IMG/VR virus record: IMGVR_UViG_3300013233_000093
Location: 124,001-188,000 of that record
Reading direction: 5' to 3' (one strand)
DNA: 64,000 nucleotides
In this document: in pieces, positions 10,755-43,008 of the stretch
How positions within the stretch are numbered: position 1 is the stretch's first letter
Layout of the letters: each line of letters opens with the position of its first letter
Program-made: the position numbers and the translations under genes
Notes under the pieces: generated by a model
What the model was told of the DNA's origin: nothing
What the model saw: the letters and a program-made list of their open reading frames with translations, nothing else
Databases searched by the model: none

Positions 10755-13169
10755 ATGGCTAAACGTAAAAAATCACCTAAGACTAAGGTGTCGAAGGCTG
10801 AGCTTAAAAACGCACTAAAGGTTTCGGCCAGCTTAATCGTCCCGCGTAAGAAAACCGCACCACGTAAAGGAAACGCAGGTGCATTGACGAGCGTCATTAC
10901 CAATGCACTGAACACCACAGGTAAGGGCGTCAGTGAGAACAAGTTAATGATGCGCTTGTTGCCAGACCTAGAGGTTGTAGCCAACATCACCGTGGGGTCT
11001 GTACTGGCGCCCAAGGATCTACTGGATCCCAGCTTACACTTCACGTTAGATATACCACCGGATAGAAAGGCACCTTCCCCAGAGGTATTGTCGTATGTAT
11101 CGAATCACTTCACAAACGAATCGGGTTACAACCTCCTGTCGAAGCTTCGTACGATCTTAAGAGACGCGTTGTTTGAGGAGGGCGCACATGCTTCCATTAT
11201 CTTGCCAGCTAAGACACTAGAAGATTTCTCTGCCATGGCCAGAGCTGAACTGGCAAAGGTACACGTAACGGAGAAGGGCGGTAAACTCGGTGCCCTGTCG
11301 TATGGCATGCAGTCACTGCAATTAGCAGCAACCTCCGCTGTAAATGAAATGATGCAGTACGGACTTGTGTCTGGAGATACAAAATACGGCTTCGATGTAT
11401 GTGACAATCCTGCAGTACTGCGAGCACCTGAAACTGTGACCAGTTCTGTAAGCGATATGTACGCCACTGCAGTAGGGACACAGTCCATCACTAAAGCAGG
11501 TGGATACACTTCAGTGACAGCGGGTAAAACTCCAGACGGCGAGCCGCTCGTGCTGCGCGTGCCTATGGACAGCATAGCGCCTGTTTACAGCAACGGCGAT
11601 ACGATTGGTTACTACCTGTTGTTAGACGATCAAGGCCGTCCTGTTTCAAAGATACAACACGGGGCAGCGGGGGAACGTGTTCAGCGCGAGTTAAATAGAA
11701 TGTCTAAGGAGAACATCCTTGGAGGCATACTGTCCGCCGTTGGCATTCGCCAGAGTACAGACACAAACAAACCCAATGCAGCCGTGATGTTAAACGAGTA
11801 TGAAAATGTACTTGACGCAGAATTGGCAGCGCAACTTAACAAGTCAGGTGTATTCGGTAAAGACGTGACGGTAAGTCATCCCACGGGTTTTGCCCGTACT
11901 ATGTTTTATCGCGCACTGCGCAGCACTAAAACGAGAATGCTATTTGTCCCGACGTCTCTGGTGGCCTACTATGCACACAGACGCAACGAGTTTGGTTTAG
12001 GCGAAAGCTTGCTGGAGTCCACCAAGGCGTACGGCGTCATGCGGGTAACATTGTTGCTTGCTCACGTCATGAGTGGCGTGAAGGCGTCCGTGGGCAGAAC
12101 CATACTTGACGTGACGTTAGACGAAGATGACAACGATCCTGAAGCTACTGTGTCGGCGTCAGTGGCCAACTATGCGTCATATCAAACAGATCTGGTGTCC
12201 TTTAACATGCAGCAGTTTGATGGCTTGGCTGCATCGCTTAACCGTGCATCATTAGATGTGAATGTAGACGGCGGAGATATCTTCCCCGGCACAAAAACCG
12301 AACTACGGGATGCATCAAGATCGCCCATTGATCCAGATACGGATACACTAGACGAGTTGAAGATGATGCAGTACATGGGCATAGGCGGCCTTTTACCCGA
12401 GTTGGTATCCAGTGTGATATCTGGAGACACCGCCACTGCAGTGACGACTCGCTCAGAACTCTTTGCAAAGACAATCATCGACATTGGCGATGGGTTTAGT
12501 GAGTACCTTACAGAGTTTGTGAGGAACTACATCAAGAACAGCGAACTGCTCACCAAAAAGATCAAAGAAGGTTTGGGTAAAGACATGGACGCAAGCGAAT
12601 GGATCGACTCGCTTAGAGTCAAGATCCCTCGACCTGACCTAGTTAAGATTAAGGCGCAGGGCGAGGCATTAAATGAGTTTAAGTCCTATGTGGAAGACGC
12701 CATCGAGGCCTTTGTCAGTGAAGACATGGTAGATTCGTTGTTCGACGGTGACGTCGACTCACGCATGATGGCCACCATACAAGAAGGCGCTAAGGGCGTG
12801 ATCATCCGTAACTGGATGGCTAAGCAAAACATGTTACCTGAAATGGTTAACGCCTTTAGTACGGACGGCGATGTGATGGGCGACGCGATCGTAGATCACA
12901 ACAACCTTCTTCTAGATGTACTCAAGCCGGTACTGCTCACCATGCTTAAGAAGGAAGTGAAACTTGCTAAGCGTATGGAGAAGGCTAAAGAAGATCCTGC
13001 TGAGGAAGAAGCAGCCGCAGAGGCGGAGGCTAATGATCCTGCCGCTGGCGGCGATGACGCTGGCGGCGAGACACCGCCCACTGACGACGCAGGCGGTGAC
13101 GCATCCGTTGAACCAGGCGCAGCCGACGACGGTGCCCCGGGCGGAGCTGATCCATTCGACATGGGGTAA
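10755..13169 (+). CDS. Portal protein (phiKZ gp129-like)
   Basis: 804 aa; LLPDLE....I.VGSVL.PKDL, GYYLLLDDQGRP, YYA...NEFG.G.SLL motifs; acidic Gly-rich tail; gene order. Confidence 0.7.
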   Translation: MAKRKKSPKTKVSKAELKNALKVSASLIVPRKKTAPRKGNAGALTSVITNALNTTGKGVSENKLMMRLLPDLEVVANITVGSVLAPKDLLDPSLHFTLDIPPDRKAPSPEVLSYVSNHFTNESGYNLLSKLRTILRDALFEEGAHASIILPAKTLEDFSAMARAELAKVHVTEKGGKLGALSYGMQSLQLAATSAVNEMMQYGLVSGDTKYGFDVCDNPAVLRAPETVTSSVSDMYATAVGTQSITKAGGYTSVTAGKTPDGEPLVLRVPMDSIAPVYSNGDTIGYYLLLDDQGRPVSKIQHGAAGERVQRELNRMSKENILGGILSAVGIRQSTDTNKPNAAVMLNEYENVLDAELAAQLNKSGVFGKDVTVSHPTGFARTMFYRALRSTKTRMLFVPTSLVAYYAHRRNEFGLGESLLESTKAYGVMRVTLLLAHVMSGVKASVGRTILDVTLDEDDNDPEATVSASVANYASYQTDLVSFNMQQFDGLAASLNRASLDVNVDGGDIFPGTKTELRDASRSPIDPDTDTLDELKMMQYMGIGGLLPELVSSVISGDTATAVTTRSELFAKTIIDIGDGFSEYLTEFVRNYIKNSELLTKKIKEGLGKDMDASEWIDSLRVKIPRPDLVKIKAQGEALNEFKSYVEDAIEAFVSEDMVDSLFDGDVDSRMMATIQEGAKGVIIRNWMAKQNMLPEMVNAFSTDGDVMGDAIVDHNNLLLDVLKPVLLTMLKKEVKLAKRMEKAKEDPAEEEAAAEAEANDPAAGGDDAGGETPPTDDAGGDASVEPGAADDGAPGGADPFDMG

Positions 13170-16681: not shown

Positions 16682-17569
16682 ATGAACATCAGTTGCGCAC
16701 TTAACGGCATTTTAGGCCACGTGGGAGTAGACGAGTCAGGCATGCATGCCGTGGTGTCCGTCGAGGGTAAGATAGCTACATATCGCTTAGGCGACCCCGA
16801 CACAGTAGTGGACGGAGCACAGCTCACTTGTGACGGCGAGTACTTCATCGTGGCAATTACAGCTAACGCACAAACCGACCTGTTGACCTTACGTGTCCAT
16901 AAGCAACCAGGGGCGATCGATCTTACATTACAACACCGGCAGGAAATATCGTGCGTGTCTATAGACATGCGCCAGACCAGCGGGTCAGTGGCAGTAAACA
17001 TTACGCAGCGGAACTATTTGTCCAACAGCTTTAGTAAGTCCACTTATGTTATTTACTCAGGTGATTTGATTGCGGTTACTGTGGGACTGGATTACGTATT
17101 TGATTACGATAAAAACGGTTATGTACTGGGCATGTGCGATGGTGTATTAACGCGGACACATACAGACAGTAATGGCTTCACAAACATCAACTCACTGATC
17201 CCTGACATTATTGAAGGTTACAACATAGCAGGGTTACGCATCAATGACAACGATTTGGTCAGTATTGCGCTAAGCTCACCATGTCCTGGAGGTGTTTGGC
17301 ATTCCATTCTAATCGTTAACTACGTTACAGGCGAGGTGTACGACGATTCCTACATCCCATCTGTCCATTCTGAAGACACACTGGCCATACCTGCCTCTTC
17401 GCCCAATACGTTTATCTACACAAACGACTATCACGTGAAGGAAGGCAGAATGGATACCTTTATAGGGTTGAACTCGTGGGCGTATATTAACCTGGAGAAG
17501 ATAGGCGTCATTAGGGAAAACACCGGACTGGCTGCGTTGGAAGCAAAGAAACGAGTAGTGATGCAATAA
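16682..17569 (+). CDS. Beta-rich hypothetical protein
   Basis: 295-aa ORF filling the space between a terminator and a promoter. Confidence 0.75.
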   Translation: MNISCALNGILGHVGVDESGMHAVVSVEGKIATYRLGDPDTVVDGAQLTCDGEYFIVAITANAQTDLLTLRVHKQPGAIDLTLQHRQEISCVSIDMRQTSGSVAVNITQRNYLSNSFSKSTYVIYSGDLIAVTVGLDYVFDYDKNGYVLGMCDGVLTRTHTDSNGFTNINSLIPDIIEGYNIAGLRINDNDLVSIALSSPCPGGVWHSILIVNYVTGEVYDDSYIPSVHSEDTLAIPASSPNTFIYTNDYHVKEGRMDTFIGLNSWAYINLEKIGVIRENTGLAALEAKKRVVMQ

Positions 17570-17570
17570 A

Positions 17571-17629
17571 CCTCACCGTTTATTCAAAACTATATCACTA
17601 TTATGATGGACAACGTGTTGTTGTCTTTA
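17571..17629 (+). promoter_or_regulatory. Early promoter cassette copy 3
   Basis: cctcaccgtt TATTCAAAACTATATCACTATTATGA tggacaacgtgttgttgtcttta. Confidence 0.9.
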
Positions 17630-22025: not shown

Positions 22026-22214
22026 GTGGGTAGTATGAAATGTGGACTAATGATTTACACGCACAGCGGACTGTGGTCTAGGCCTGTAATGCGGATGTGT
22101 AACGCGTGTAAACAGTTTAACACGTGTACGATAACAGCACTCGAAGTGCGTAACTACAGAAGGAATCGGTTACATGAAGAATCAAACAATCGCGTCTCTG
22201 GAAAACATGCTTAA
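22026..22214 (+). CDS. Possible small protein (CxxC)
   Basis: 62-aa ORF filling the gap before the ligase; AAGGT RBS. Confidence 0.35.
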   Translation: MGSMKCGLMIYTHSGLWSRPVMRMCNACKQFNTCTITALEVRNYRRNRLHEESNNRVSGKHA

Positions 22215-24153
22215 GCAGTTAACGCGCGAGTACACAGAGAACGGCAAGACAGATTTATCCGACGCGGCATTCGACGTGTTGCGTTCTAAGCTGGTGGCAT
22301 TGTACGACGGCAAGGTACCTGCTAAATCCGTGCTAAACGCAGTAGGTGCACCGCCTGCGTTGGGTGTGACTAAAACAGTCACTCGTAAGATTCCCATGGA
22401 GTCGTTAGCGAATGCGTTCTCAGACGAAGACATTCAAACGTTTTGTGATAAGGTACAGCAAGCGTACATAGAAGTACACGGCAAGAACGCTCGTCCAAAG
22501 TACCTTGTGGAGCCTAAGTGGGACGGACTGGCTTGTGAGTTAACATACGAGCCTGGGAAAGAAGTGCGTGCGTCTACACGAGGAGACGGCACGATAGGTG
22601 AGGATATCTCTATCACAGTCGGTAAAATGACTGATTCGATACCCCGTACAATCAAGTTCGATAAGACTTTGACTATTCGAGGCGAGATTGTCATGACCCG
22701 TGCTGACATGGATAAATGGAACAACGACCAGACTTGGGCGCGTAATAAACCATTGGTGTCTCCAAGGTCTGCGGCATCCGGGTCTGTCAAAAAGATGAAC
22801 GATCCGATGTCTAACGAGATAAGACCCTTGAAGTTCATGCCATACGCTTATGTTATCGATGGGTTAGTGCATACCACAGACGTATCCATCACGGATGCGT
22901 TTCCAGCCACTAAAGCACTTACTGCCTTCGGTGGCCACGAGTCCGTAGTGACTGCGTGTCTTACAACACTGTCGTACGCCGGTACTACCGACGATGTGCC
23001 CGATACTGACGGTGTAGTGATAAAGGTAAAGTGTCCTAAGGTACGAGCCTACATGGGGTCTACGTCGCATCACCCCAGATGGGCGATTGCACGTAAATGG
23101 GCACCTGCTAAATCCATTACTCCGTTATTAAGCGTTAGATGGAGCGTAGGTCAGTCTGGCGATATTACACCGGTGGCAGTCCTAGCACCTGTGCAGGTAG
23201 GTGACGTGATGGTGTCGTCCGCACAGTTGTTTAACATGGCACACATCAAGGCGCTTGACTTGATGATCGGCCAAGACGTATACATCCACAGAGCCGGAGA
23301 AGTCGTGCCTGAATTAATCGGCCCTGTCCCTGACACGATTCATAACGATTGTCGTGAGATCAAAGCTCCGATTCGCTGTCCCAGCTGTGGCAGTAAGGTG
23401 GTGGTGGAACCTAAGTCTAGCGTGGTCTCGTGTCCGTATACAGAAGGTTGTCCAGAACAGGTCATTGGTAGATTGTATCGTGCGTTCGGCAAGCATGGCT
23501 TGGATGTAAAAGGCCTCGGAGTCAAAACCTTGCAGCGCTTCTATTTAGAATGTGAGGTTATGCATCCAATAGACTTGCTGGAGTTAGATACGGATGAGTT
23601 GATAAAGGGGTTTGGATCGGCATTGGAGGCGACTAAGTACGTCACCTACTTGATCGCACATGAAGTGCCGTACAACAAGTTTATCTTCGCGTTAGCTATT
23701 CCAGGCGTGGGCAAAAGTTTGTCACTTACTTTGGCAAAACGGTTTAAGACCATCGCCGGTTTATTCACAGCCACTGTAGAAGAGTTAGCGGATCTGCCTG
23801 ACGTAAGTAAGGAATCCGCCGTGAGAATATCGGAGTTTCTACAGGACGAAGATAATTGCGTAACTGCAAATGCAATAACAGACCACGTTCGACTTTCGTA
23901 TACCACGTATCGGGATAACGCATTTTCTCATAAACGGGTGTGTGTAACAGGGTCGTTCTCAGGAGCGTCTAGATCCGAGGTGACTACTGCACTGGAAAAC
24001 TCCAACGCTAAGGTTATGTCTTCTTTAAGCAAACGTGCCGACTACCTTATCATGGGTTCGTCTGGAGTGGGCAAGAAGAAAACCAAAGCGGCTTTGGATT
24101 ATGGCATAGAACTTATCACAGAAGACGAGGTCTATAAGATTTTAGATCTTTAA
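22174..24153 (+). CDS. ligA: NAD-dependent DNA ligase
   Basis: EPKWDG (KxDG), TRGDG, RGE, DGVVIK, PRWAIARK, OB fold, CPSC..C..C zinc finger, HhH repeats, BRCT domain. Confidence 0.97.
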   Translation: MKNQTIASLENMLKQLTREYTENGKTDLSDAAFDVLRSKLVALYDGKVPAKSVLNAVGAPPALGVTKTVTRKIPMESLANAFSDEDIQTFCDKVQQAYIEVHGKNARPKYLVEPKWDGLACELTYEPGKEVRASTRGDGTIGEDISITVGKMTDSIPRTIKFDKTLTIRGEIVMTRADMDKWNNDQTWARNKPLVSPRSAASGSVKKMNDPMSNEIRPLKFMPYAYVIDGLVHTTDVSITDAFPATKALTAFGGHESVVTACLTTLSYAGTTDDVPDTDGVVIKVKCPKVRAYMGSTSHHPRWAIARKWAPAKSITPLLSVRWSVGQSGDITPVAVLAPVQVGDVMVSSAQLFNMAHIKALDLMIGQDVYIHRAGEVVPELIGPVPDTIHNDCREIKAPIRCPSCGSKVVVEPKSSVVSCPYTEGCPEQVIGRLYRAFGKHGLDVKGLGVKTLQRFYLECEVMHPIDLLELDTDELIKGFGSALEATKYVTYLIAHEVPYNKFIFALAIPGVGKSLSLTLAKRFKTIAGLFTATVEELADLPDVSKESAVRISEFLQDEDNCVTANAITDHVRLSYTTYRDNAFSHKRVCVTGSFSGASRSEVTTALENSNAKVMSSLSKRADYLIMGSSGVGKKKTKAALDYGIELITEDEVYKILDL

Positions 24154-24199: not shown

Positions 24200-25246
24200 A
24201 TGTTTAAATGGTTACGTAAGTTTTTCACCTTCCCAGAAGACGCAGTGAACACCTACATACCGGAGGAACGGGTGGCGTTCCGTCAATACACGTACGACCA
24301 AAGCGATAGTGCCGAGGAAAACAAATACCGATTGCCTATCGGAGGGTATTCAACACACGAAGACAGGTTTATATGCAATTTAGGCGGCACGGTCTATATA
24401 GGGGACAGGCACGAGCTCCGTAATTCGTTAAGCGTGTCAGGTGATTTAGCCAACATAGATGTGTCTAAACTAACACGGATTACAAGCAACCAAGTCCTCA
24501 TCGCACATGTACACAGTTACTCAGACTACAGCTCCGTAGTGGTGTGTAAGAACGGGGATGTATTGCATCATTCGTTTTATAGACCTACACGCGTTGGTTT
24601 TGAAGGTACAAATGACGATCGTGTAAACACCAAGGTGGGATGGGTTAAAGACGGCTTGCTTCTGGATGCAACGGCGAATGAGTTTGACACTGGAGTGTAC
24701 CTTCTTAGAGGAGGAACGCACTGGTGTGGCGTGGTGATGGTAATACCGGAGGGACACAGCGCTACACGCTTGCATGGTGCGATAACAGACCCCGACGAAA
24801 TAGCCACGGCACGAATAGAAACAAACATGCCTAGAACGTGCGAGGTCATTACCCGTAATTACCACGCATTGCTCAGTTTTAAGTCTAATGCGTGTTGTAT
24901 CGTAAAACGCACGGGCAATCGTGATAAAATGTCGTGGACGTCACACGATGTTGCTGCATTGCATAACCGTGGCGAGTTGTTGCCTGATAATTATAAAGTG
25001 TTACTGCTTGAAGAACTTCGCGCTGGGTTTAATGACATGGTTGATGCAGGTACGCGCTCTGGCAATAAGTCGGACTACGCATTCGTAATATCACCAACCA
25101 TGGACAACTGCACTATCTACGGCGTCCAACATCGCACTGAATCACATGTAAGTCATGATTCATCCCATAGTAGCGATCACGGATCGTCGCACTGTTCCCC
25201 GGACACGAGTTCAAGTTACGACGGGTCATCCGGTGGTTGCGATTAG
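24200..25246 (+). CDS. Hypothetical protein with amphipathic N-terminus and Ser/His/Asp tail
   Basis: 348 aa; starts MFKWLRKFF; ends SSSYDGSSGGCD. Confidence 0.8.
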   Translation: MFKWLRKFFTFPEDAVNTYIPEERVAFRQYTYDQSDSAEENKYRLPIGGYSTHEDRFICNLGGTVYIGDRHELRNSLSVSGDLANIDVSKLTRITSNQVLIAHVHSYSDYSSVVVCKNGDVLHHSFYRPTRVGFEGTNDDRVNTKVGWVKDGLLLDATANEFDTGVYLLRGGTHWCGVVMVIPEGHSATRLHGAITDPDEIATARIETNMPRTCEVITRNYHALLSFKSNACCIVKRTGNRDKMSWTSHDVAALHNRGELLPDNYKVLLLEELRAGFNDMVDAGTRSGNKSDYAFVISPTMDNCTIYGVQHRTESHVSHDSSHSSDHGSSHCSPDTSSSYDGSSGGCD

Positions 25247-26551: not shown

Positions 26552-26681
26552 CTGGATCAATCAGCGGCCGATCACACTCCCCAGTAACAAACCTGTGGCG
26601 GAGCTATCCAGCGATGAACTCAGTCTACGGACTAAACAAAACCTTACCAGCTTAAAGAGAGAATTAGAAGATGGCAAATAG
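26523..26681 (+). CDS. Small protein (52 aa, not in ORF track)
   Basis: MNIFERWIRNWINQ...KRELEDGK fills the apparent gap and overlaps both neighbours. Confidence 0.55.
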   Translation: MNIFERWIRNWINQRPITLPSNKPVAELSSDELSLRTKQNLTSLKRELEDGK

Positions 26682-27345
26682 CACACTTACATTAACAGAA
26701 GAAACGGTAAGTATCTTCTTAGACATGTTACGCAAGCAAGAAGCAATGAACGATGATGTAATGGCAAGACGCGCTATGTCAGAAACACTTTCTACTAGGC
26801 TGGTGGTTTGGTCGGATGCCATTCTAACCGAAGCAGTGGAGTGCATGGGCTATCTTGGATGGGAGTGGTGGAAACTCACTGAGGAAAATACATACCAAGC
26901 TATGCTAGAGGCGGTGGACATTCTGCATTTTGTATTAGCGGATATGATTACATCACACGGAGTAGACAAAGCATCGGTTTATCTGTCAGCAGCATACCTG
27001 GACATGGAAGACCTCGATTGCGTGGTGATAGATCCGATGTGCGTCATTAACCAAATTGTTATAGAAGCCGTATGTGGTAATCCAGATGTTGAAATCATTG
27101 TACCTCTGATGGAACTCTTTCATTACTTTGATATGGATCTACAGGATGTCCATAGATGGTACGTGGCTAAACATACGCTGAACAACTTTAGACAAGCTAC
27201 TGGTTACAGTAAGGGCGCGTATACGAAGATTTGGAATGGTGTGGAAGACAACGTGTATCTCGCACGGTACATGACTGAGAACGATACAAGTCCTTTGGAC
27301 ACGGCAAAACTTACCGAATGGCTTTCCTTTAACTACCCAGGGTAG
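26671..27345 (+). CDS. dut: Dimeric (all-alpha) dUTPase
   Basis: E..E...GWEWWK, LEAVDILHF and K.TLNNFRQ..GY..G.Y.K.W.G.EDN motifs of the dUTPase_2 family. Confidence 0.9.
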   Translation: MANSTLTLTEETVSIFLDMLRKQEAMNDDVMARRAMSETLSTRLVVWSDAILTEAVECMGYLGWEWWKLTEENTYQAMLEAVDILHFVLADMITSHGVDKASVYLSAAYLDMEDLDCVVIDPMCVINQIVIEAVCGNPDVEIIVPLMELFHYFDMDLQDVHRWYVAKHTLNNFRQATGYSKGAYTKIWNGVEDNVYLARYMTENDTSPLDTAKLTEWLSFNYPG

Positions 27346-28153: not shown

Positions 28154-28540
28154 ATGAAGGTTAAGGACTTAAGGAAGCTCTTATATGAACTAGCGGAGAT
28201 CTATCGATGTTCTCCGGTGGGATTACCTAACTTCGGAGGTAATGGGATTTTTGGATACCCGACTGGAAGTGCACTTCCATATAACAGCCGTGGCAGGGCA
28301 CTCTATAGCAACCACACATATGCAGACACACCAAGTAACGATAATGAGGTGTACATACGGGCTAGGTGTGGATCATTACCAATGCCAGTTAGCTTACTTT
28401 TTTTAGCAGACCAGTTATTTTATAACGAAGACGAGGCACGAGTCATGGTCCACAATTCTCAAACTGGCACTTTATCGAGAGTGACGGGCGCACGTTGGAA
28501 TAAGCAGTATAACTGTATCGAGTTAATAACTAGGAGATAA
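28154..28540 (+). CDS. Hypothetical protein
   Basis: 128 aa; AAGGA RBS; MKVKDL start. Confidence 0.75.
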   Translation: MKVKDLRKLLYELAEIYRCSPVGLPNFGGNGIFGYPTGSALPYNSRGRALYSNHTYADTPSNDNEVYIRARCGSLPMPVSLLFLADQLFYNEDEARVMVHNSQTGTLSRVTGARWNKQYNCIELITRR

Positions 28541-28542
28541 AA

Positions 28543-29352
28543 ATGAAGACTAATGAAATACACGGTTACGAAGTTGGCACTGGTAGCGCGCACGTATACA
28601 CTTCGCATGAAGTTGCTCTTTCAGATATGGCACAGGCACTCGTTAACGCACACGCAACGTCGTGTGCCGGGGGCAATGTCACGGTAAGTATCGACGCTGT
28701 ATTGGTTAACGCAGACACAGTCGCTGCCCGTTTATCTGAAAACGTAAAACATTGTGGGAACTACGTGCACATGGCACAATGTTACCGTAATCGCATTGAG
28801 TCCGTGTTAAGAGTAATGCACCGTGTGTATCCGGAGTTCGACGAATCGTATTTGATGGTCGATGGCGGTGACTACGTTACTGTCAAGTATGACGGCGAGG
28901 AATCGCCAATTGACAGTCTTCCCGCGGGCGTGTTAGCAATACTAAACATAGTGACTGAAATTATAGAAAGCATGCCACTCACTGGTTATGCGTATAAATC
29001 TGAAGAAGAGTCGGTCACGGTATGCATCTACCGTCTCGGATCAGGACTTCTGTCAAAAGACCAGCCCTTGATTGTACGAAAGTTAGCACAGGCGTTTCCA
29101 AATACAGATTTTTACATTACGACCGATTCCGTATTGATTATCTCTAGGTTAATCACCGGCGAGCTTAAGGTGGTAAGGAAAACACCTCGTGGATTGGAAT
29201 ACGAAGAGGTCGAATCTCCGTATGCGATGAGTACCGGTGACCTAATAAAGGCCGCATTTGGCGTGGATATGAATCAGGTCAAGGTTAAGAATGCTTCTGC
29301 CGCTGGACAGCTAGCTGCAAAGAAAGCATTGCTTAGGCTTATAGAAAGATAA
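28543..29352 (+). CDS. Degenerate ABC/AAA_21-type ATPase (PtuA-like) with catalytic motifs lost
   Basis: DSLPAG (signature), VCIYRLGSGLLSKDQ (Walker B/D-loop position), FPNTDFYITTDSVLII (H-loop), SPYAMSTGDLIKAAFGVD; no Walker A. Confidence 0.7.
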   Translation: MKTNEIHGYEVGTGSAHVYTSHEVALSDMAQALVNAHATSCAGGNVTVSIDAVLVNADTVAARLSENVKHCGNYVHMAQCYRNRIESVLRVMHRVYPEFDESYLMVDGGDYVTVKYDGEESPIDSLPAGVLAILNIVTEIIESMPLTGYAYKSEEESVTVCIYRLGSGLLSKDQPLIVRKLAQAFPNTDFYITTDSVLIISRLITGELKVVRKTPRGLEYEEVESPYAMSTGDLIKAAFGVDMNQVKVKNASAAGQLAAKKALLRLIER

Positions 29353-29353
29353 A

Positions 29354-29416
29354 CCTCACCGTTTATTCAAAACTATATCACTTAAGGGATAGATAACGTG
29401 TTGTTGTCTTTAGACT
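29354..29416 (+). promoter_or_regulatory. Early promoter cassette copy 4
   Basis: cctcaccgtt TATTCAAAACTATATCAC ttaaggg atagataacgtgttgttgtcttta. Confidence 0.85.
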
Positions 29417-29433
29417 AGAAGAGAGAATGTGAT

Positions 29434-29910
29434 ATGATAACCATTGATGTGGATATCGATTTTGGATATATGCCAGTTGGTATATTTCGAAGCGACGGTG
29501 TCTGTAGTGCACAGGAGTTTTCAGAAGACTTGCTTGTGCCTGCGCTGAAAACGGGAGACGTGGTGACGGTAGTCTTTGATGGGTTCGTCGTGACTCCGTC
29601 AGCTGCCTGGTTACGCGCGGTGTTCGAGGGACTTGTCACAGTGCACGGGTTCTGTAAAGAGGACTTATTGAAAACCCTGTACGTGACCTCCACCTTTAAG
29701 TCTATTGCCTCGCTGTCTTACGCGTACATGGAACTTGCAGGCGTGGACATGGGCGATATGTACACCGGCCAATACCTCATGGCGAATAAGATATCCCTGG
29801 ACAACTGGCATGACAGAAAGCCCGTAGACGAAGAATACAGCAAAACAAGTTTTATCCAACGCTTGCGCATTCGTGTACGTAACTACCTAAGAAGGATGTA
29901 TATATGTTAG
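29434..29910 (+). CDS. STAS-like domain protein (DUF4325-like)
   Basis: DG..SAQEF.EDLLVPAL...DVVTVVFDG...SAAWL..VF.GLV..HGF..EDL matches the recalled DUF4325 pattern. Confidence 0.75.
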   Translation: MITIDVDIDFGYMPVGIFRSDGVCSAQEFSEDLLVPALKTGDVVTVVFDGFVVTPSAAWLRAVFEGLVTVHGFCKEDLLKTLYVTSTFKSIASLSYAYMELAGVDMGDMYTGQYLMANKISLDNWHDRKPVDEEYSKTSFIQRLRIRVRNYLRRMYIC

Positions 29911-30971: not shown

Positions 30972-31050
30972 AACCACGCAGTAACCTATGGACGCCGCGG
31001 GTGAAATCGTATGTATCCATAGCACATCAAACAACTTAGAGGGTTCTAAG

Positions 31051-32064
31051 ATGACAAATGACAAAAAGCTTTTGGTTTTAATCGGGAGATTTCAACCAAC
31101 CACCAACGCACACGTGGAGCTTATCAAGCAATCCATTAAGCCGGGTGAAGATCTGTTAATCGTGATAGGCAGTGCATACGCACCACGCACGGTGAAAAAT
31201 CCGTTCACGGCTCAAGAACGTGCGGGCATGCTGGAACACGCATTACGGGCAGCAGGGATCGGATGTGGTATTCACATAGCGTACGTTCGGGATCAACGGT
31301 ATAGTCCCGCGCAGTGGATATCCGACGTACAGGTAAAGATCAGTATGTACCCGACCTCTGTAGATAACGTGACCTTGCTAGGACATCATAAGGACTCGTC
31401 GTCTCAATATCTTGACGATTTTCCAGATTATGGATATCGGGAAGGTACAAAGTTTGGCGACAACCTTAGCGCCACGACCATTCGAGATGGGTATTTCGAG
31501 TACGGCCTGGTGTTTGACGATGTACCGCTTAACGTGAAGGTGTTCATGCGTGACTTTAAAAGGACGCCTGAATACGACGCTCTTCGAACAGCGTGGACGG
31601 ACAACAAACTTTACCAAGCGTCATGGTCACGTAGCCCATACCCGCCCACGTTCATTACAGGCGATGCAGTGGTGATACAATCCAGTCACGTATTGCTTGT
31701 TAAACGCCGTGATAATCCAGGCAAGGGCTTGTTAGCATTACCTGGAGGATTCTTAGATCCTATTGAAACAGTAGAGGACTGTATACTACGAGAACTTAAG
31801 GAAGAGACTCGTATTAACTTGCCGGTGAGATTACTGCGTGACAAGCTAAAGCACATCCGTGTGTTTGATGCACCCGATCGATCGCTTCGCGGTCGTACGG
31901 TAACACACGCAGGATTATTTCTTCTGCAAGGTAAAGAGATGCCAAAGGTCAAAGGATCTGACGACGCTGAAGTCGCATCATGGGTACCACTGGCGTCATT
32001 GGACCCGGGTGTGATGTACGAAGACCATTACGACATTATCAAGGCCTTAACGGGTAACTTGTAA
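31051..32064 (+). CDS. nadM: Bifunctional NMN adenylyltransferase / Nudix ADP-ribose pyrophosphatase (NadM-Nudix, NatV-like)
   Basis: GRFQPTTNAH, NPFTAQER, SATTIR; Nudix box GGFLDPIETVEDCILRELKEET; start set at the ATG after GAGG. Confidence 0.95.
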   Translation: MTNDKKLLVLIGRFQPTTNAHVELIKQSIKPGEDLLIVIGSAYAPRTVKNPFTAQERAGMLEHALRAAGIGCGIHIAYVRDQRYSPAQWISDVQVKISMYPTSVDNVTLLGHHKDSSSQYLDDFPDYGYREGTKFGDNLSATTIRDGYFEYGLVFDDVPLNVKVFMRDFKRTPEYDALRTAWTDNKLYQASWSRSPYPPTFITGDAVVIQSSHVLLVKRRDNPGKGLLALPGGFLDPIETVEDCILRELKEETRINLPVRLLRDKLKHIRVFDAPDRSLRGRTVTHAGLFLLQGKEMPKVKGSDDAEVASWVPLASLDPGVMYEDHYDIIKALTGNL

Positions 32065-32095: not shown

Positions 32096-33532
32096 ATGAG
32101 AGATATATACGCACGTAACATGAGTGTTAACACCGATTCATACAAGGTCACCATGCCACCGCAGTACCCACCAGGTACTACTAACATTTGGGACTACATT
32201 GAATCTCGAGGCGGTCTGTACGATGCCACTTTGTTTTGCGGTATCCAGGCGTACCTCAAAGAGTATCTATCCATTCCCGTGACTAAGGAAATGGTGGATT
32301 TCTCCGAGGTCTTTTGGAAGGCACATGGTGTGCGCTATGATCGTGCCCAGTGGGATTACGTTGTAGAAAACCATGATGGCTTACTGCCTCTGGAGATCAG
32401 AGCGCTTCCAGAAGGCACCGTCTTGAAAACCCGTAACATTCTTGTCAGTGTGGTAAACACAGATGAGAAATGTAAATGGGCTACTACGTGGATCGAGAAG
32501 TCTTTACTGCGTGCTGTATGGTACGCGACATCTGTCGCTACTGTGTCGTACAACATCAAGAAAGACATCGCGCGGTTCTTACGTGACACCTCAGATGCAG
32601 GCATGATGGATCTGCGTTACATGTTACATGACTTTGGTGGACGGGGCGTAAGCTCCTTTGAATCCGCCGGTCTTGGCAGCATGGCGCATGGCTTATGTTT
32701 CGGTGGTACAGATACCCCTGAAGGCATCTTGGCTTCTATGGAGTATTATAACTCCGATGTAGCCAGTCACTCTTTATGGGGGGCTATGGAGCACAGTACG
32801 GTTACGTCTTGGGGCCGCGAAAACGAACGCCTGTCGTATGCAAACATGATCGATGAGTTTGCCGTCCCTAACGGTAAGTTTGCGATGCTGATCGATTCGT
32901 ACGATGTGTTCCACGCTGCACGGGTGATTATCGGTGAAGAGCTTCGCCAAAAGATCATCGACTGCGGCGCGCAGGTGATACTACGTCCTGACTCGGGAGA
33001 TCCTGTAACAGTGATGTTAGAGCTTCTGGAGATCCTGGGTGAGAAGTTTGGATACGACGTCAACAGTAAGGGGTATAAGATGCTCCGTACGGTGAGTTTG
33101 ATCCAAGGCGATGGCGTTTGTCACGATACCATCCTTAAGATGCTACAGGCCATTAAGGACGCTGGATGGGCTACGCTTAATGTAAGTTACGGCATGGGCG
33201 GTGCGCTACTGCAGATTCCAGATCGTGACATGCAGAAGTTTGCCATGAAGTGCAGCGCCATTAAAGTAAACGGTGAGTGGCGTACCGTGTATAAAGATCC
33301 TATCACAGATAAGGGCAAGCGTTCTAAAGCAGGACGTCTCGATCTTGTCAAGGGATGGGATGATACTGCGCGTGACAACTACTTTACCGATGTCATCGGC
33401 GATGAACCGCGCCCCAATAGTCTTTTGCGGACTGTCTGGCGTAACGGCAAGTTGCTGGTGGATGACGATTATAAGATGCTTCGTGATCGCGCCGGGTGGA
33501 ACGACTCCATAGAAGACTTTATAACTCGTTAG
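32096..33532 (+). CDS. nadV: Nicotinamide phosphoribosyltransferase
   Basis: TDSYK, HDFG.RG, MEHSTVTSWG, DSYD, LRPDSGDP, IQGDG, GMGGALLQ, KDPITD.GK.SK.G. Confidence 0.96.
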   Translation: MRDIYARNMSVNTDSYKVTMPPQYPPGTTNIWDYIESRGGLYDATLFCGIQAYLKEYLSIPVTKEMVDFSEVFWKAHGVRYDRAQWDYVVENHDGLLPLEIRALPEGTVLKTRNILVSVVNTDEKCKWATTWIEKSLLRAVWYATSVATVSYNIKKDIARFLRDTSDAGMMDLRYMLHDFGGRGVSSFESAGLGSMAHGLCFGGTDTPEGILASMEYYNSDVASHSLWGAMEHSTVTSWGRENERLSYANMIDEFAVPNGKFAMLIDSYDVFHAARVIIGEELRQKIIDCGAQVILRPDSGDPVTVMLELLEILGEKFGYDVNSKGYKMLRTVSLIQGDGVCHDTILKMLQAIKDAGWATLNVSYGMGGALLQIPDRDMQKFAMKCSAIKVNGEWRTVYKDPITDKGKRSKAGRLDLVKGWDDTARDNYFTDVIGDEPRPNSLLRTVWRNGKLLVDDDYKMLRDRAGWNDSIEDFITR

Positions 33533-33543
33533 ACAATAAGACA

Positions 33544-33579
33544 CGAAGCTGGGATTTCCAGCTTCGGTCTTTTATTTTT
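33544..33579 (+). terminator. Canonical intrinsic terminator
   Basis: cgaagctgg-gattt-ccagcttcg followed by T-rich sequence. Confidence 0.85.
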
Positions 33580-33594
33580 GCTGTGTTGACTAAA

Positions 33595-33643
33595 TATTTA
33601 AAACTATATCACTATTATGATAGATAACGTGTTGTTGTCTTTA
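33595..33643 (+). promoter_or_regulatory. Early promoter cassette copy 5
   Basis: TATTTAAAACTATATCACTATTATGA tagataacgtgttgttgtcttta. Confidence 0.9.
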
Positions 33644-33694
33644 GACTAAGGATACGTCCCGGGCATTTAACTAGCCCATAACAGGAGCAATAGA

Positions 33695-35934: not shown

Positions 35935-35986
35935 CTTATTTGACATGCCTTAATGCACCACTGGGCCGTCGTCAGTGATCGTCGGT

Positions 35987-36028
35987 TATTCAAAACTATA
36001 TCACTATTATGATAACGATCGTGTTATC
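35987..36028 (+). promoter_or_regulatory. Early promoter cassette copy 6
   Basis: TATTCAAAACTATATCACTATTATGA; hairpin gataac-gatcgt-gttatc. Confidence 0.9.
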
Positions 36029-39942: not shown

Positions 39943-40015
39943 TATTCAAAACTATATCACTATTATGATGGACAACGTGTTGTTGTCTTTACTTTAACCA
40001 AAGAGAAATAGAACT
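39943..40015 (+). promoter_or_regulatory. Early promoter cassette copy 7
   Basis: Nearly identical to 768-840 from promoter through hairpin and RBS to the ATG. Confidence 0.9.
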
Positions 40016-42955: not shown

Positions 42956-42965
42956 TCTCCAGATT

Positions 42966-43008
42966 TATTCAAAACTATATCACTATTATGATACTTAGGT
43001 AATGTATT
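42966..43008 (+). promoter_or_regulatory. Early promoter copy 8
   Basis: TATTCAAAACTATATCACTATTATGA tacttaggtaat. Confidence 0.9.

What the first reader, a model, noticed from the sequence alone, without database searches (positions are those of the whole stretch)
28543..29352. Catalytically dead PtuA-like ATPase: candidate decoy against Septu/retron defence
Seen: the C-terminal half follows the AAA_21 ATPases of Septu and type I-A retron systems motif by motif, but each catalytic motif is changed. The signature LSxGE becomes LPAGV, Walker B/D-loop LIDEIDLHLHPxWQ becomes CIYRLGSGLLSKDQ, the H-loop TTHSP becomes TTDSV, and there is no Walker A. The structural segments (L..AFPN..F.IT, Y..S...I...FGV) are retained in an intact ORF with an RBS, and there is no adjacent HNH partner. 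Inference: a captured defence subunit kept as a dominant-negative mimic that poisons PtuAB-type oligomers or sequesters the nuclease.
Basis: partly seen in the sequence, partly recalled or inferred. Interest (0 to 1): 0.78.

Follow-up and report, generated by a model that had tools for sequence, protein, structure and literature searches.

The report
Dead mini PtuA-like ATPase in phage
A giant phage carries a shortened copy of a bacterial defence ATPase that has lost every ATP-handling residue but keeps the tail that, in related proteins, holds the nuclease, so it may be a decoy that disarms that defence, though nobody has tested this.

Summary
ORF 28543-29352 (269 aa, strong RBS) is a real but degenerate relative of PtuA-type ABC ATPases, by sequence and by fold (PDB phmmer E 7e-7; Foldseek E 5e-9; VIA-align Z 13.9). 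It has no Walker A, and the signature, Walker B/D-loop and H-loop read LPAGV, VCIYRLGSGLLSKDQ and TTDSV.

The family assignment needs correcting. Its closest relatives (E 1.7e-23; family HMM E 7e-41) are not HNH-partnered Septu or retron PtuA. They are ~380-aa ATPases with intact motifs, followed within a few bases by a ~150-aa VapC-like PIN protein in 49 of the 55 close-family gammaproteobacterial loci. The window holds no such PIN gene.

Divergence is uneven. Identity to the family consensus is 0.37 in the ATPase half, below all 45 members. It is 0.47 in the C-terminal three-helix domain, where the family mean is 0.49. In PtuA that domain clamps the nuclease. Neutral decay is unlikely: the chance of keeping the frame open is about 1% or less.

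A second shortened, partly degenerate copy sits on a phage-like contig, and NARP2-type counter-defence genes lie 1.6 kb downstream.

The decoy reading is plausible but untested, and the likely target is an ATPase-PIN module rather than Septu.

The parts
28532..28536 (+). Shine-Dalgarno AGGAG, 6 nt upstream of the ATG. It lies inside the last codons of the upstream ORF (stop at 28538-28540).
   Evidence: Read directly from the sequence.
28543..29352 (+). Whole ORF of 269 aa plus stop: a shortened, motif-dead PtuA-like ABC ATPase.
28543..28737 (+). N-terminal region, aa 1-65. It has no detectable sequence similarity to the family, yet stands in for about 170 family positions (beta-hairpin, P-loop, Q-loop, Insert 1). 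It is modelled as helix 21-40, strand 47-51 and helix 57-69, and superposes on the start of ABC heads.
   Evidence: The family HMM gives no alignment to aa 1-75. AF2 pLDDT is 30-65 here. VIA-align aligns model residues 22-269 to PtuA from residue 32. The ESM Atlas structure search aligns residues 13-269.
28738..29154 (+). Second half of the ABC ATPase head, aa 66-204. Homologous to family HMM positions 171 to about 310. Identity to the family consensus (measured over aa 85-204) is 0.37, below all 45 members.
28918..28932 (+). Remnant of the signature motif, LPAGV (aa 126-130; family LS[ST]GF). The signature Ser is replaced by Pro.
29020..29064 (+). Remnant of Walker B and the D-loop, VCIYRLGSGLLSKDQ (aa 160-174; family V[LF]IDEIESHLHxxWQ). 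Changes: D163Y, E164R, H168G, H170L, W173D.
29119..29133 (+). Remnant of the H-loop, TTDSV (aa 193-197; family [AT]THSP). Change: H195D.
29155..29226 (+). Linker with two beta-strands (aa 205-228). Corresponds to the PtuA 'linker domain'.
   Evidence: AF2 secondary structure. PtuA domain map from PMC12673091.
29227..29346 (+). C-terminal three-helix domain (aa 229-268). All nine conserved columns of the tail (aa 226-266) are kept (P226, just upstream of this domain, then D233, F239, N244, K247, Q256, K260, L263, L266). Identity to consensus is 0.47 against a family mean of 0.49. It is the counterpart of the PtuA CTD that binds the nuclease.
   Evidence: PMC12819146 and PMC12673091.
29355..29417 (+). 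Copy of a repeated intergenic, promoter-like element directly after the stop codon. It marks the end of this gene's block and the start of the next, which holds the DUF4325-like gene, NMNAT-Nudix and NAMPT.

Best explanation
The gene encodes a pseudo-ATPase. It descends from the ATPase subunit of a bacterial two-gene module in which a PtuA-like ABC ATPase (~380 aa) is paired with a VapC-like PIN nuclease (~150 aa). That module resembles Septu and HEC-03 in architecture.

In the phage copy:
- About 105 residues of the N-terminal half are gone, and the rest of that half is unrecognisable by sequence.
- Every ATP-binding or ATP-hydrolysing residue of the second half is replaced.
- The hydrophobic core of the head is kept.
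- The C-terminal three-helix domain is kept at the level of constraint typical for the family.

In PtuA, two such C-terminal domains from an ATPase dimer clamp the helical domain of the nuclease.

Proposed mechanism (inferred, not shown): during infection the phage protein uses this domain to bind the host's PIN effector. It could do so alone, or by replacing one protomer next to a host ATPase subunit. It cannot bind ATP or form an ATP-sandwich dimer, so the resulting complex cannot pass on the activating signal. The RNase stays sequestered or uncoupled. The protein would thus act as a phage-made decoy subunit or antitoxin mimic.

Shown: homology, fold, motif loss, uneven conservation, intact frame, phage context.
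Inferred: binding to the PIN protein or to the ATPase, and any anti-defence effect.
For: Homology and fold:
- PADLOC PtuA models and PDB PtuA sequences.
- 55 homologues, best E 1.7e-23; family HMM E 7e-41.
- Foldseek and VIA-align top hits are all PtuA. The ESM Atlas structure search gives TM 0.81-0.83 to AAA_21 proteins.

Family identity:
- The ATPase ORFs called in full in the fetched bacterial loci carry Walker A, signature, Walker B and H-loop (the few that lack the strict Walker A pattern are N-terminally cut, broken or variant copies). 49 of the 55 close-family loci have a PIN gene starting -70 to +16 nt (41 of them -7 to +7) from the ATPase stop, and one more is a natural fusion.
- 13 of 15 partners match Pfam PIN (best E 1.4e-12), and their profile hits VapC structures.

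Selective retention:
- Identity to consensus is 0.37 in the ATPase half, lower than all 45 members (mean 0.63). It is 0.47 in the C-terminal domain (family mean 0.49).
- The CTD/ATPase identity ratio is 1.27, above the family maximum of 1.12.
- 9 of 9 conserved columns of the C-terminal tail are kept, against 20 of 45 elsewhere (Fisher p 0.002).
- ATP-site columns: 2 of 10 kept, against 27 of 44 for the others (p 0.03).

Role of the C-terminal domain: in PtuA it binds PtuB, and deleting it reduces or abolishes function (PMC12819146 and PMC12673091).

Not decay:
- The terminal branch is 2.36 substitutions per column against a median of 0.5.
- In simulation, neutral change that lowers amino-acid identity by a comparable factor (0.15-0.2 nt substitutions per site) leaves the frame open in about 1% of runs or fewer, counting substitutions only.
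- GC, GC3 and codon preference lie within the range of the phage's other genes.
- The RBS and translational coupling are intact.

Recurrence: a second shortened, partly degenerate copy, P0039 (187 aa; GKT changed to GRK, signature Ser to Pro, HLH to HLP, THS to TNS). It is about 70% identical over its C-terminal part to an intact bacterial member. It lies among small same-strand ORFs next to a gene that matches phage minor tail proteins.

Context: a NARP2-type counter-defence pair, NMNAT-Nudix plus NAMPT, lies 1.6 kb downstream. The best bacterial matches are Thiothrix, Thiolinea and Thiomicrospira MAGs, and the phage comes from a microbial-mat sample.
Against: - No binding or phenotype data exist.
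- No orthologue was found in 50,697 phage genomes or in IMG/VR. So dN/dS cannot be measured, and the gene is not a widespread phage strategy.
- That the CTD of this PIN-partnered family binds the PIN protein is an analogy with PtuA-PtuB, not a result. The PIN proteins are only ~150 aa and show no obvious separate helical docking domain.
- The AF2 model of a natural ATPase-PIN fusion (L047) gave pLDDT of only about 52-55 for the CTD. It carries no interface information.
- The host is unknown, so it is not shown that the host has the module.
- A pair of CTDs is needed to clamp the nuclease in PtuA. Whether the dead head can still dimerise is unknown.
- The statistical contrasts rest on 54 columns and on motif classes chosen by me.
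Confidence: 0.42

Rival explanations
1. Exapted binding protein with a role unrelated to counter-defence. The dead ABC head plus helical tail would serve as an adaptor or regulator for some phage or host protein other than the defence module, for example in nucleotide metabolism or replication, like its neighbours.
For: - The gene lies in a block with an NAD-dependent ligase, a dUTPase_2/MazG-like gene and unknown genes.
- It has a very long branch and an unrecognisable N-terminus, as expected after a change of function.
- No PIN gene was found in the window or, with the one pattern searched, in IMG/VR.
Against: The part kept at family-typical conservation is exactly the partner-binding tail, including nine family-specific columns. 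A new partner would be expected to reshape that surface.
Confidence: 0.25
2. A decaying remnant of a defence gene once carried by the phage, with no present function.
For: - All catalytic residues are lost, the N-terminal part is lost, and the partner gene is absent.
- No orthologues are known.
- Broken copies of the family exist in bacteria: L033, L063 and L064 have split ORFs.
Against: - The frame is open for 269 codons despite a terminal branch 4.7 times the median. The simulated chance of this under neutral substitution is about 1% or less, and indels are ignored.
- Divergence is strongly uneven, with the CTD as conserved as in working members.
- The RBS and coupling are intact, and composition is within the range of the other phage genes.
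- The broken bacterial copies look different: their motifs are intact and their frames are broken.
Confidence: 0.13
3. One reading: a dominant-negative mimic aimed at HNH-type Septu or type I-A retron PtuAB (or PARIS) complexes.
For: - PtuA of Septu and of retrons Ec78 and Ec83 are the best solved-structure matches.
- The CTD architecture is shared.
Against: - Sequence similarity to these is marginal (E 1e-6 to 0.5), and for the CTD almost nil: the second domain scores -2.3 bits.
- Similarity to the PIN-partnered family is E 1e-23 to 1e-41 and includes the CTD.
- The partner-binding surface is therefore that of the PIN-partnered family.
Confidence: 0.08
4. A component of a phage-borne defence or superinfection-exclusion system. 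It would work with a new partner, for example the DUF4325/STAS-like gene downstream, or with a separately encoded N-terminal ATPase half.
For: - Phages do carry ABC-ATPase defence systems such as PARIS and OLD.
- A weak DUF4325 hit lies in the next gene.
Against: - The family HMM finds no Walker A or N-terminal half anywhere in six frames of the 64-kb window. The other ~159 kb of the contig could not be read.
- Walker B, the D-loop and the H-loop are dead, so no ATPase could be rebuilt even with a partner.
- A promoter-like repeat separates the gene from the DUF4325-like gene.
- No PADLOC hit in any neighbour.
Confidence: 0.07

Closest known systems
Unnamed bacterial two-gene module: PtuA-like AAA_21 ATPase (~370-415 aa) plus VapC-like PIN protein (~150 aa). 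Found in Thiothrix, Thiolinea, Psychrobacter, Neisseria, Pasteurellaceae, Xanthomonas, Providencia and others.
   Same: - Clear sequence homology over query aa 66-268 (E 1.7e-23; HMM E 7e-41).
- Same order of elements in the second half of the head, the linker and the three-helix C-terminal domain.
- The nine conserved columns of the C-terminal tail are identical.
   Different: - The query is 269 aa, not ~380.
- It lacks Walker A and about 105 N-terminal residues.
- The signature Ser, Walker B Asp-Glu, D-loop His residues, the Trp of WQ and the H-loop His are all replaced.
- It has no PIN partner.
- It is in a phage, not a bacterial chromosome.
PtuA of Septu and of type I-A retrons (Ec78/Eco7, Ec83). 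PDB 8EEA, 8EE4, 9KJX, 9NNK, 9E90.
   Same: - Best matches among solved structures: Foldseek E 5e-9, VIA-align Z 13.9 over 242 residues, phmmer E 7e-7 to residues 320-435.
- Same layout of ATPase head, linker and three-helix CTD. In PtuA that CTD binds the nuclease.
   Different: - Only about 16-18% identity.
- PtuA pairs with an HNH nuclease (PtuB), and Ec78 PtuA has an NTD and a coiled coil that the query lacks.
- PtuA is an active ATPase whose Walker B residues are needed for defence: the D395A mutant abolishes it.
HEC-03 (Payne et al., bioRxiv 10.1101/2024.01.29.577857): an ABC ATPase plus a VapC-like PIN protein. It is an experimentally shown phage defence system in which both genes are required.
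   Same: Same two-gene architecture as the query's parent family, an ABC ATPase followed by a PIN RNase.
   Different: - Membership of the parent family in HEC-03 is not shown.
- Two PIN partners gave no PADLOC hit at E <= 1.
- The 25 best PADLOC hits of the ATPases are all PtuA or retron I-A ATPase models.
- The query itself is a dead orphan subunit.
Phage-encoded mimics of defence components, for example antitoxin mimics such as ICP1 Gp145 against DarT (cited in PMC13728456).
   Same: The proposed logic is the same: a phage protein without enzymatic activity binds and neutralises a toxic effector.
   Different: - Those cases have been tested experimentally; this one has not.
- The papers read and searched here name no counter-defence protein derived from a defence ABC ATPase.
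- The anti-Septu measures they name are tRNA-Tyr supply and the proteins Anhur and Svarog, whose mechanism is unknown.

Membership tests
ABC ATPase superfamily, PtuA/AAA_21 branch | ABC-type head fold | tested here: met
   - AF2 model with mean pLDDT 80.9, above 90 for most of aa 80-269.
- Foldseek top 50 hits are all PtuA, E down to 5e-9.
- VIA-align Z 13.9, with 242 residues aligned.
- ESM Atlas structure search TM 0.81-0.83.
ABC ATPase superfamily, PtuA/AAA_21 branch | Walker A P-loop GxxxxGK[ST] | tested here: not met
   No such motif in the 269 aa. The family has GxNGxGKTK.
ABC ATPase superfamily, PtuA/AAA_21 branch | Signature motif (LSGGQ-like; here LS[ST]GF) | tested here: not met
   The query reads LPAGV. 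The Ser is conserved in 98% of the family and is Pro in the query.
ABC ATPase superfamily, PtuA/AAA_21 branch | Walker B hhhhDE and D-loop | tested here: not met
   VCIYRLGSGLL in place of V[LF]IDEIESHLH. D163Y, E164R, H168G and H170L all fall in columns that are 100% conserved in the family.
ABC ATPase superfamily, PtuA/AAA_21 branch | H-loop histidine | tested here: not met
   TTDSV in place of [AT]THSP. H195D falls in a 100% conserved column.
Pfam AAA_21 (PF13304) | Score above the gathering threshold | tested here: not met
   No Pfam family at E <= 10. Three of the four full-length relatives scanned match across AAA_21 at E 1e-12 to 4e-15 (the fourth, P0009, only its last ~50 positions).
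Septu (PtuA-PtuB) | Adjacent HNH nuclease PtuB | tested here: not met
   No HNH or PtuB hit in the neighbouring genes by Pfam, PHROGs or PADLOC.
Septu (PtuA-PtuB) | PtuA model match at the family level | tested here: inconclusive
   - PADLOC PtuA models match at E 2e-7 to 0.04, over only part of each model.
- NCBIfam PtuA scores 20 bits against a cut-off of 500.
PtuA-like ATPase + PIN module (the parent family found here) | Sequence homology to the ATPase subunit, including the C-terminal domain | tested here: met
   E 1.7e-23 to the best member. HMM positions 171-374 align to query 66-268 at E 7e-41. Nine of nine conserved columns of the C-terminal tail are kept.
PtuA-like ATPase + PIN module (the parent family found here) | PIN gene immediately downstream | tested here: not met
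   The partner HMM finds nothing in six frames of the window (best E 0.51). It is present in 49 of the 55 close-family bacterial loci.
HEC-03 defence system | Match to the HEC-03A and HEC-03B models | tested here: inconclusive
   - PIN partners of the parent family give no PADLOC hit at E <= 1.
- The query's PADLOC list holds HEC-01A (E 0.033) but no HEC-03A.
- Only the best 25 of 52-97 hits of the full-length ATPases were shown.
Phage counter-defence protein | Inhibits a defence system, or binds its component | not testable with these tools
   No multimer prediction or experiment was available. The support is contextual only.

The most novel reading that the evidence does not exclude
Phages repeatedly capture the ATPase subunit of ABC-ATPase/nuclease defence modules. 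They then strip it down to a catalytically dead, miniaturised scaffold that keeps only the effector-docking tail. That would make a new class of counter-defence protein: a 'decoy subunit' or ATPase-derived antitoxin mimic that neutralises a PIN RNase, an RNA-directed effector that a phage nucleus would not be expected to shield against. Two candidate captures would be the window gene, in a phiKZ-like jumbo phage, and P0039, in a phage-like contig. Their separate origin is suggested, not proven.
Probability: 0.3. Interest if true: 0.85.

Novelty: new variant of a known kind. Interest (0 to 1): 0.66.

Why it matters
ABC-ATPase/nuclease pairs (Septu, retron I-A, PARIS, Gabija, OLD, HEC-01 to HEC-04) are among the commonest bacterial defences. 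The papers read here name no protein inhibitor built from the defence's own ATPase.

If this protein is a decoy subunit, it would:
- add a new route of counter-defence evolution, in which a sensor or scaffold is captured and its enzyme activity is killed;
- give a natural minimal construct that marks which surface of these ATPases holds the effector;
- point to an uncharacterised PtuA-like ATPase plus PIN module, widespread in Gammaproteobacteria, as a real phage defence worth testing.

It would also show how a jumbo phage related to nucleus-forming phages might deal with an RNA-directed effector. That the phage nucleus gives no protection against such effectors is my own background knowledge, not a result obtained here.

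If it is not a decoy, it is still a clean example of a pseudoenzyme kept under selection in a virus.

Tried and rejected
- **Paralogues in the window:** none.
- **Relatives in 50,697 phage genomes, by DNA and tblastn:** none.
- **Word-indexed search of 5.8 billion proteins:** only the protein itself.
- **IMG/VR scans:** scans with the protein, two alignments and a back-translated AFGVD[LM]NxxK pattern found only the window's own contig, plus four distant full-length ATPases. The degenerate motifs of the query escape patterns built from intact family members, so sensitivity was limited.
- **PIN partner:** its HMM found nothing in six frames of the window. The one peptide pattern used found nothing in IMG/VR.
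- **N-terminal ATPase half elsewhere in the window:** none. The rest of the 223-kb contig could not be read.
- **Sequence similarity of aa 1-75 to the family HMM:** none.
- **Population variation and transcription from public runs:** one DNA run of the same microbial-mat sample holds identical contigs at low depth. The small RNA run of the same sample (about 4 million letters) holds none of it, so there is no pN/pS and no evidence on expression.
- **AF2 model of a natural ATPase-PIN fusion (L047, 537 aa) to see the docking:** the C-terminal domain came out at pLDDT of about 52-55, and no coordinates or PAE were available, so nothing can be said about an interface.
- **Tree to test whether the query and P0039 share one capture:** unresolved, and the query sits on a long branch. 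P0039's 70% identity to an intact bacterial member suggests a separate, more recent origin, but does not prove it.
- **Downstream DUF4325-like gene as a partner:** considered and set aside. It has no PADLOC hit and shows no similarity to the PIN partner (E 0.52), and a promoter-like repeat lies between the two genes.
- **Upstream 128-aa ORF as a missing N-terminal half:** rejected. It has no family hit and no Walker A.
Full report
**1. What is at the coordinates**

ORF 28543-29352 (+) is open for 269 codons. An AGGAG lies at 28532-28536, six bases before the ATG, and the ATG comes three bases after the stop of the upstream 128-aa ORF. The window is part of IMG/VR contig IMGVR_UViG_3300013233_000093 (222,906 bp).

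Two large virion proteins in the window (8610-10691 on the minus strand, and 10755-13169) match structural proteins of PhiPA3, phiKZ-like phages, Goslar and SPN3US at 23-30% identity. The element is therefore a distant relative of the phiKZ-like jumbo phages. One public DNA run holding the sequence is a microbial-mat metagenome.

**2.

Pfam finds nothing in the protein. Other searches do:
- PADLOC PtuA models match at E 2e-7 and weaker.
- phmmer against PDB sequences aligns aa 90-203 to residues 320-435 of retron Ec78/Eco7 PtuA at E 7e-7.
- An exhaustive phmmer over 1.84 billion cluster representatives gives 55 hits, the best at E 1.7e-23 and 38% identity.

Nearly all hits are proteins of 370-415 aa whose last ~185 residues match query aa ~80-269. 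A family HMM built without the query aligns its positions 171-374 to query 66-268 at E 7e-41.

The family motifs are close to invariant: GxNGxGKTK, LS[ST]GF, V[LF]IDEIESHLHxxWQ and [AT]THSP. The query has no P-loop, and reads LPAGV, VCIYRLGSGLLSKDQ and TTDSV. Of the 12 columns that are 100% conserved in the 45 relatives, the query changes D163, E164, H168, H170, W173, H195 and L211. It keeps G129, I162, Q174, L181 and F190.

An AF2 model (mean pLDDT 80.9, above 90 for most of aa 80-269) finds only PtuA chains among the 50 best Foldseek matches in the PDB (E down to 5e-9). VIA-align gives Z 13.9 over 242 residues to Septu PtuA.

**3. The closest family is not Septu**

I looked up where the relatives are encoded. 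In Logan and ENA contigs, and in the 55 close-family loci among the 64 fetched from species-representative genomes, the ATPase gene carries all four motifs wherever it is called in full. In 49 of those 55 loci it is followed by a gene of about 150 aa that starts -70 to +16 nt (in 41 of them -7 to +7 nt) from the ATPase stop. The genomes include Thiothrix, Thiolinea, Thiomicrospira, Psychrobacter, Neisseria, Glaesserella, Gallibacterium, Xanthomonas and Providencia.

Thirteen of 15 such partners match Pfam PIN (best E 1.4e-12). Their profile hits VapC ribonuclease structures. The acidic residues D11, E50 and D107 are invariant.

In Xanthomonas axonopodis DSM 3585 the two genes read as one 537-aa fusion. 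A few bacterial copies are broken; they have split frames but intact motifs.

This architecture parallels HEC-03, an ABC ATPase plus VapC-like PIN pair shown to defend E. coli with both genes required (bioRxiv 10.1101/2024.01.29.577857). Membership in HEC-03 is not shown, however. The PIN partners have no PADLOC hit, and the best PADLOC hits of the ATPases are PtuA models.

The phage window has no PIN relative in any frame. It also has no second piece of the ATPase.

**4. What kind of derivative it is**

By sequence, the first 65 residues match nothing in the family. They stand in for about 170 family positions.

Two independent structure predictions nevertheless superpose almost the whole protein on complete AAA_21 heads:
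- the AF2 model, aa 22-269, aligns to PtuA from residue 32;
- the ESM Atlas model, aa 13-269, gives TM 0.81-0.83.

Model confidence in the N-terminus is only moderate (pLDDT 30-65). I therefore read the protein as a miniaturised dead head rather than a bare half-domain, and I mark that as tentative.

After the head come a two-strand linker (aa 205-228) and three helices (aa 231-268). This matches the 'linker' and 'CTD' of Retron-Eco7 PtuA. That CTD has three helices, and two of them from a PtuA dimer sandwich the helical CTD of PtuB. Deleting the PtuA CTD reduces defence in Retron-Eco7 (PMC12673091), and the paired extensions form a nine-helix bundle with PtuB that is critical for toxicity in Ec78 (PMC12819146).

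**5. Divergence is uneven**

I compared each sequence with the consensus of the others.

| Region | Query identity to consensus | Family mean | Note |
|---|---|---|---|
| ATPase half (aa 85-204) | 0.37 | 0.63 (min 0.38) | lower than all 45 members |
| C-terminal domain (aa 229-268) | 0.47 | 0.49 | 18 members score lower |

The CTD/ATPase ratio of 1.27 exceeds the family maximum of 1.12.

Among columns at least 80% conserved in the family, all nine in the C-terminal tail (aa 226-266) are kept, against 20 of 45 elsewhere (Fisher p 0.002). Of ten ATP-site columns (signature, Walker B, D-loop, H-loop), two are kept, against 27 of 44 other conserved columns (p 0.03).

A neutrally decaying copy should lose residues evenly. 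This one has lost chemistry and kept its core and tail.

**6. Selection**

No orthologue exists with which to compute dN/dS. The one run that holds the sequence shows no variants and no RNA.

The indirect evidence is as follows:
- The terminal branch is 2.36 substitutions per column against a median of 0.5.
- In a simulation on the ORF itself, neutral substitution that brings amino-acid identity down to 0.64-0.72 (0.15-0.2 nt substitutions per site) leaves the frame open in only 0.5-1.3% of runs, and at 0.3 per site in none of 4,000. Indels are ignored.
- GC (0.464), GC3 (0.463) and synonymous codon preference fall within the range of the other phage genes, towards the low end.

I conclude that the gene has been maintained by selection as a non-catalytic protein.

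**7. A second example**

P0039 (187 aa) is another shortened relative. It keeps the first strand, has a degenerate P-loop (GDDGIGRK), and then jumps to the signature region (TPGA, again Pro at the Ser position). It keeps Walker B DE, but has HLP for HLH and TTNSP for TTHSP. Its C-terminal domain is well conserved.

It is about 70% identical over its C-terminal part to an intact bacterial member. That suggests a more recent origin than the window gene's, though a separate capture is not proven.

It lies on a 2.9-kb contig of seven same-strand genes, six of them shorter than 150 aa and none with a Pfam hit. The last gene matches phage proteins, annotated 'minor tail protein' in one record, at E 1e-18.

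The contig is short, so 'phage' is probable rather than certain. If it holds, shortened tail-retaining copies have arisen more than once in phages.

**8. Context**

A promoter-like repeat follows the stop codon directly. Eight copies lie in the window, all intergenic and on the plus strand.

The next block contains a weakly DUF4325/STAS-like gene, two unknown genes, an NMNAT-Nudix gene (30988-32064) and a NAMPT gene (32096-33532), and ends at a terminator-like hairpin. NAMPT plus NMNAT is the NARP2 pathway, which phages use to overcome NAD-depleting defences (bioRxiv 10.1101/2024.02.11.579819). So a known counter-defence function lies 1.6 kb away.

The best bacterial matches of the query are sulfur-oxidising Thiotrichales MAGs, which fits a microbial-mat phage. 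The host itself is not established.

**9. Most likely mechanism**

Shown: descent from the ATPase of an ATPase-PIN module, loss of all ATP chemistry, retention of the fold core and of the tail, and maintenance of the frame.

Inferred, by analogy with PtuA-PtuB: the tail docks the PIN effector. The phage protein would do this alone, or by taking the place of one protomer beside a host ATPase. It would form complexes that cannot bind ATP, cannot close an ATP sandwich and so cannot relay activation, which keeps the RNase silent. I put this at about 0.4.

**10. Comparison with what is known, and novelty**

Counter-measures to Septu and retron-Eco7 named in the literature read here are extra tRNA-Tyr, the T5 protein Rad (described in the literature read here only as a retron anti-defence protein), and the proteins Anhur and Svarog, whose mechanism is unknown. 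I found no report of a counter-defence protein derived from a defence ABC ATPase.

The protein is a new variant of a known kind: a PtuA-like ATPase turned into a dead, miniaturised orphan in a phage. The decoy function would be new if proven.

The parent ATPase-PIN module appears to be undescribed as such and deserves testing in its own right.

Noticed in passing
window 29355-29417, 17566-17629, 762-816, 33619-33648, 1483-1509, 39943-39991, 42964-42984, 35986-36005: A repeated intergenic element with core TTATTCAAAACTATATCACTATTATGAT..AACGTGTTGTTGTCTTTA. All copies are on the + strand, between genes and shortly upstream of a gene start, so it is probably a phage-specific promoter or leader. 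A contig in run X1 shares only this element, with unrelated sequence on both sides. From memory, TATATCAC resembles the phiKZ early-promoter core; I did not check this.
   Followed up: partly
window 30988-32064 and 32096-33532: An NMNAT (cytidylyltransferase-like) + Nudix fusion next to a NAMPT gene, followed by a strong terminator-like hairpin at 33544-33566. This is a NARP2-type NAD+ reconstitution pair, a known phage counter-defence.
   Followed up: partly
window 29434-29910: A 158-aa gene with a weak DUF4325 (STAS-like) hit (E 1e-3, below the Pfam cut-off). It also matches the C-terminus of phrog_5816 (441-aa profile, unknown function). No link to the ATPase gene was found.
   Followed up: partly
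loci L013-L066 (bacterial genomes), L001-L007, L077-L079: A widespread two-gene module in Gammaproteobacteria (with a few Beta- and Bacteroidota members): a PtuA-like AAA_21 ATPase with a translationally coupled VapC-like PIN gene. It is inserted in different neighbourhoods (beside yaeQ/rpsB, lysE, ychJ). It is apparently not named as a defence system and is analogous to HEC-03.
   Followed up: partly
L047:2625-4238 (Xanthomonas axonopodis DSM 3585): The ATPase and the PIN protein read as one 537-aa fusion joined by about 12 residues. In other Xanthomonas genomes the two genes overlap by 4 nt. This is either a real fusion or a one-base sequencing error.
   Followed up: partly
L080:1072-1635 (Logan contig SRR22681137_179156): P0039, a 187-aa shortened relative. 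It has a degenerate P-loop (GRK), Pro at the signature Ser position, HLP and TTNSP, but an intact Walker B and C-terminal domain. It lies among small ORFs next to a gene that matches phage minor tail proteins.
   Followed up: partly
L033, L063, L064: Bacterial copies of the ATPase split into two ORFs, with motifs still intact. They show what ordinary decay of this gene looks like.
   Followed up: no
window 8610-10691 (-), 10755-13169 (+), 3064-4647 (+): Virion structural proteins and a 'polymerase' PHROG (phrog_2943) shared with phiKZ-like jumbo phages at 23-30% identity. The contig is a very divergent member of that group, from a microbial mat. I did not identify chimallin or tubulin genes.
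   Followed up: partly
window 24200-25246: A 348-aa ORF with no family hit, ending in a Ser/His/Asp-rich tail (…HVSHDSSHSSDHGSSHCSPDTSSSYDGSSGGCD).
   Followed up: no
window 22174-24153 and 26671-27345: An NAD+-dependent DNA ligase-like ORF (659 aa; named from its sequence, no family search was run on it) and a dUTPase_2/MazG-like pyrophosphohydrolase lie upstream in the same gene block. The NAD-dependent ligase fits with the phage carrying its own NAD+ supply.
   Followed up: no
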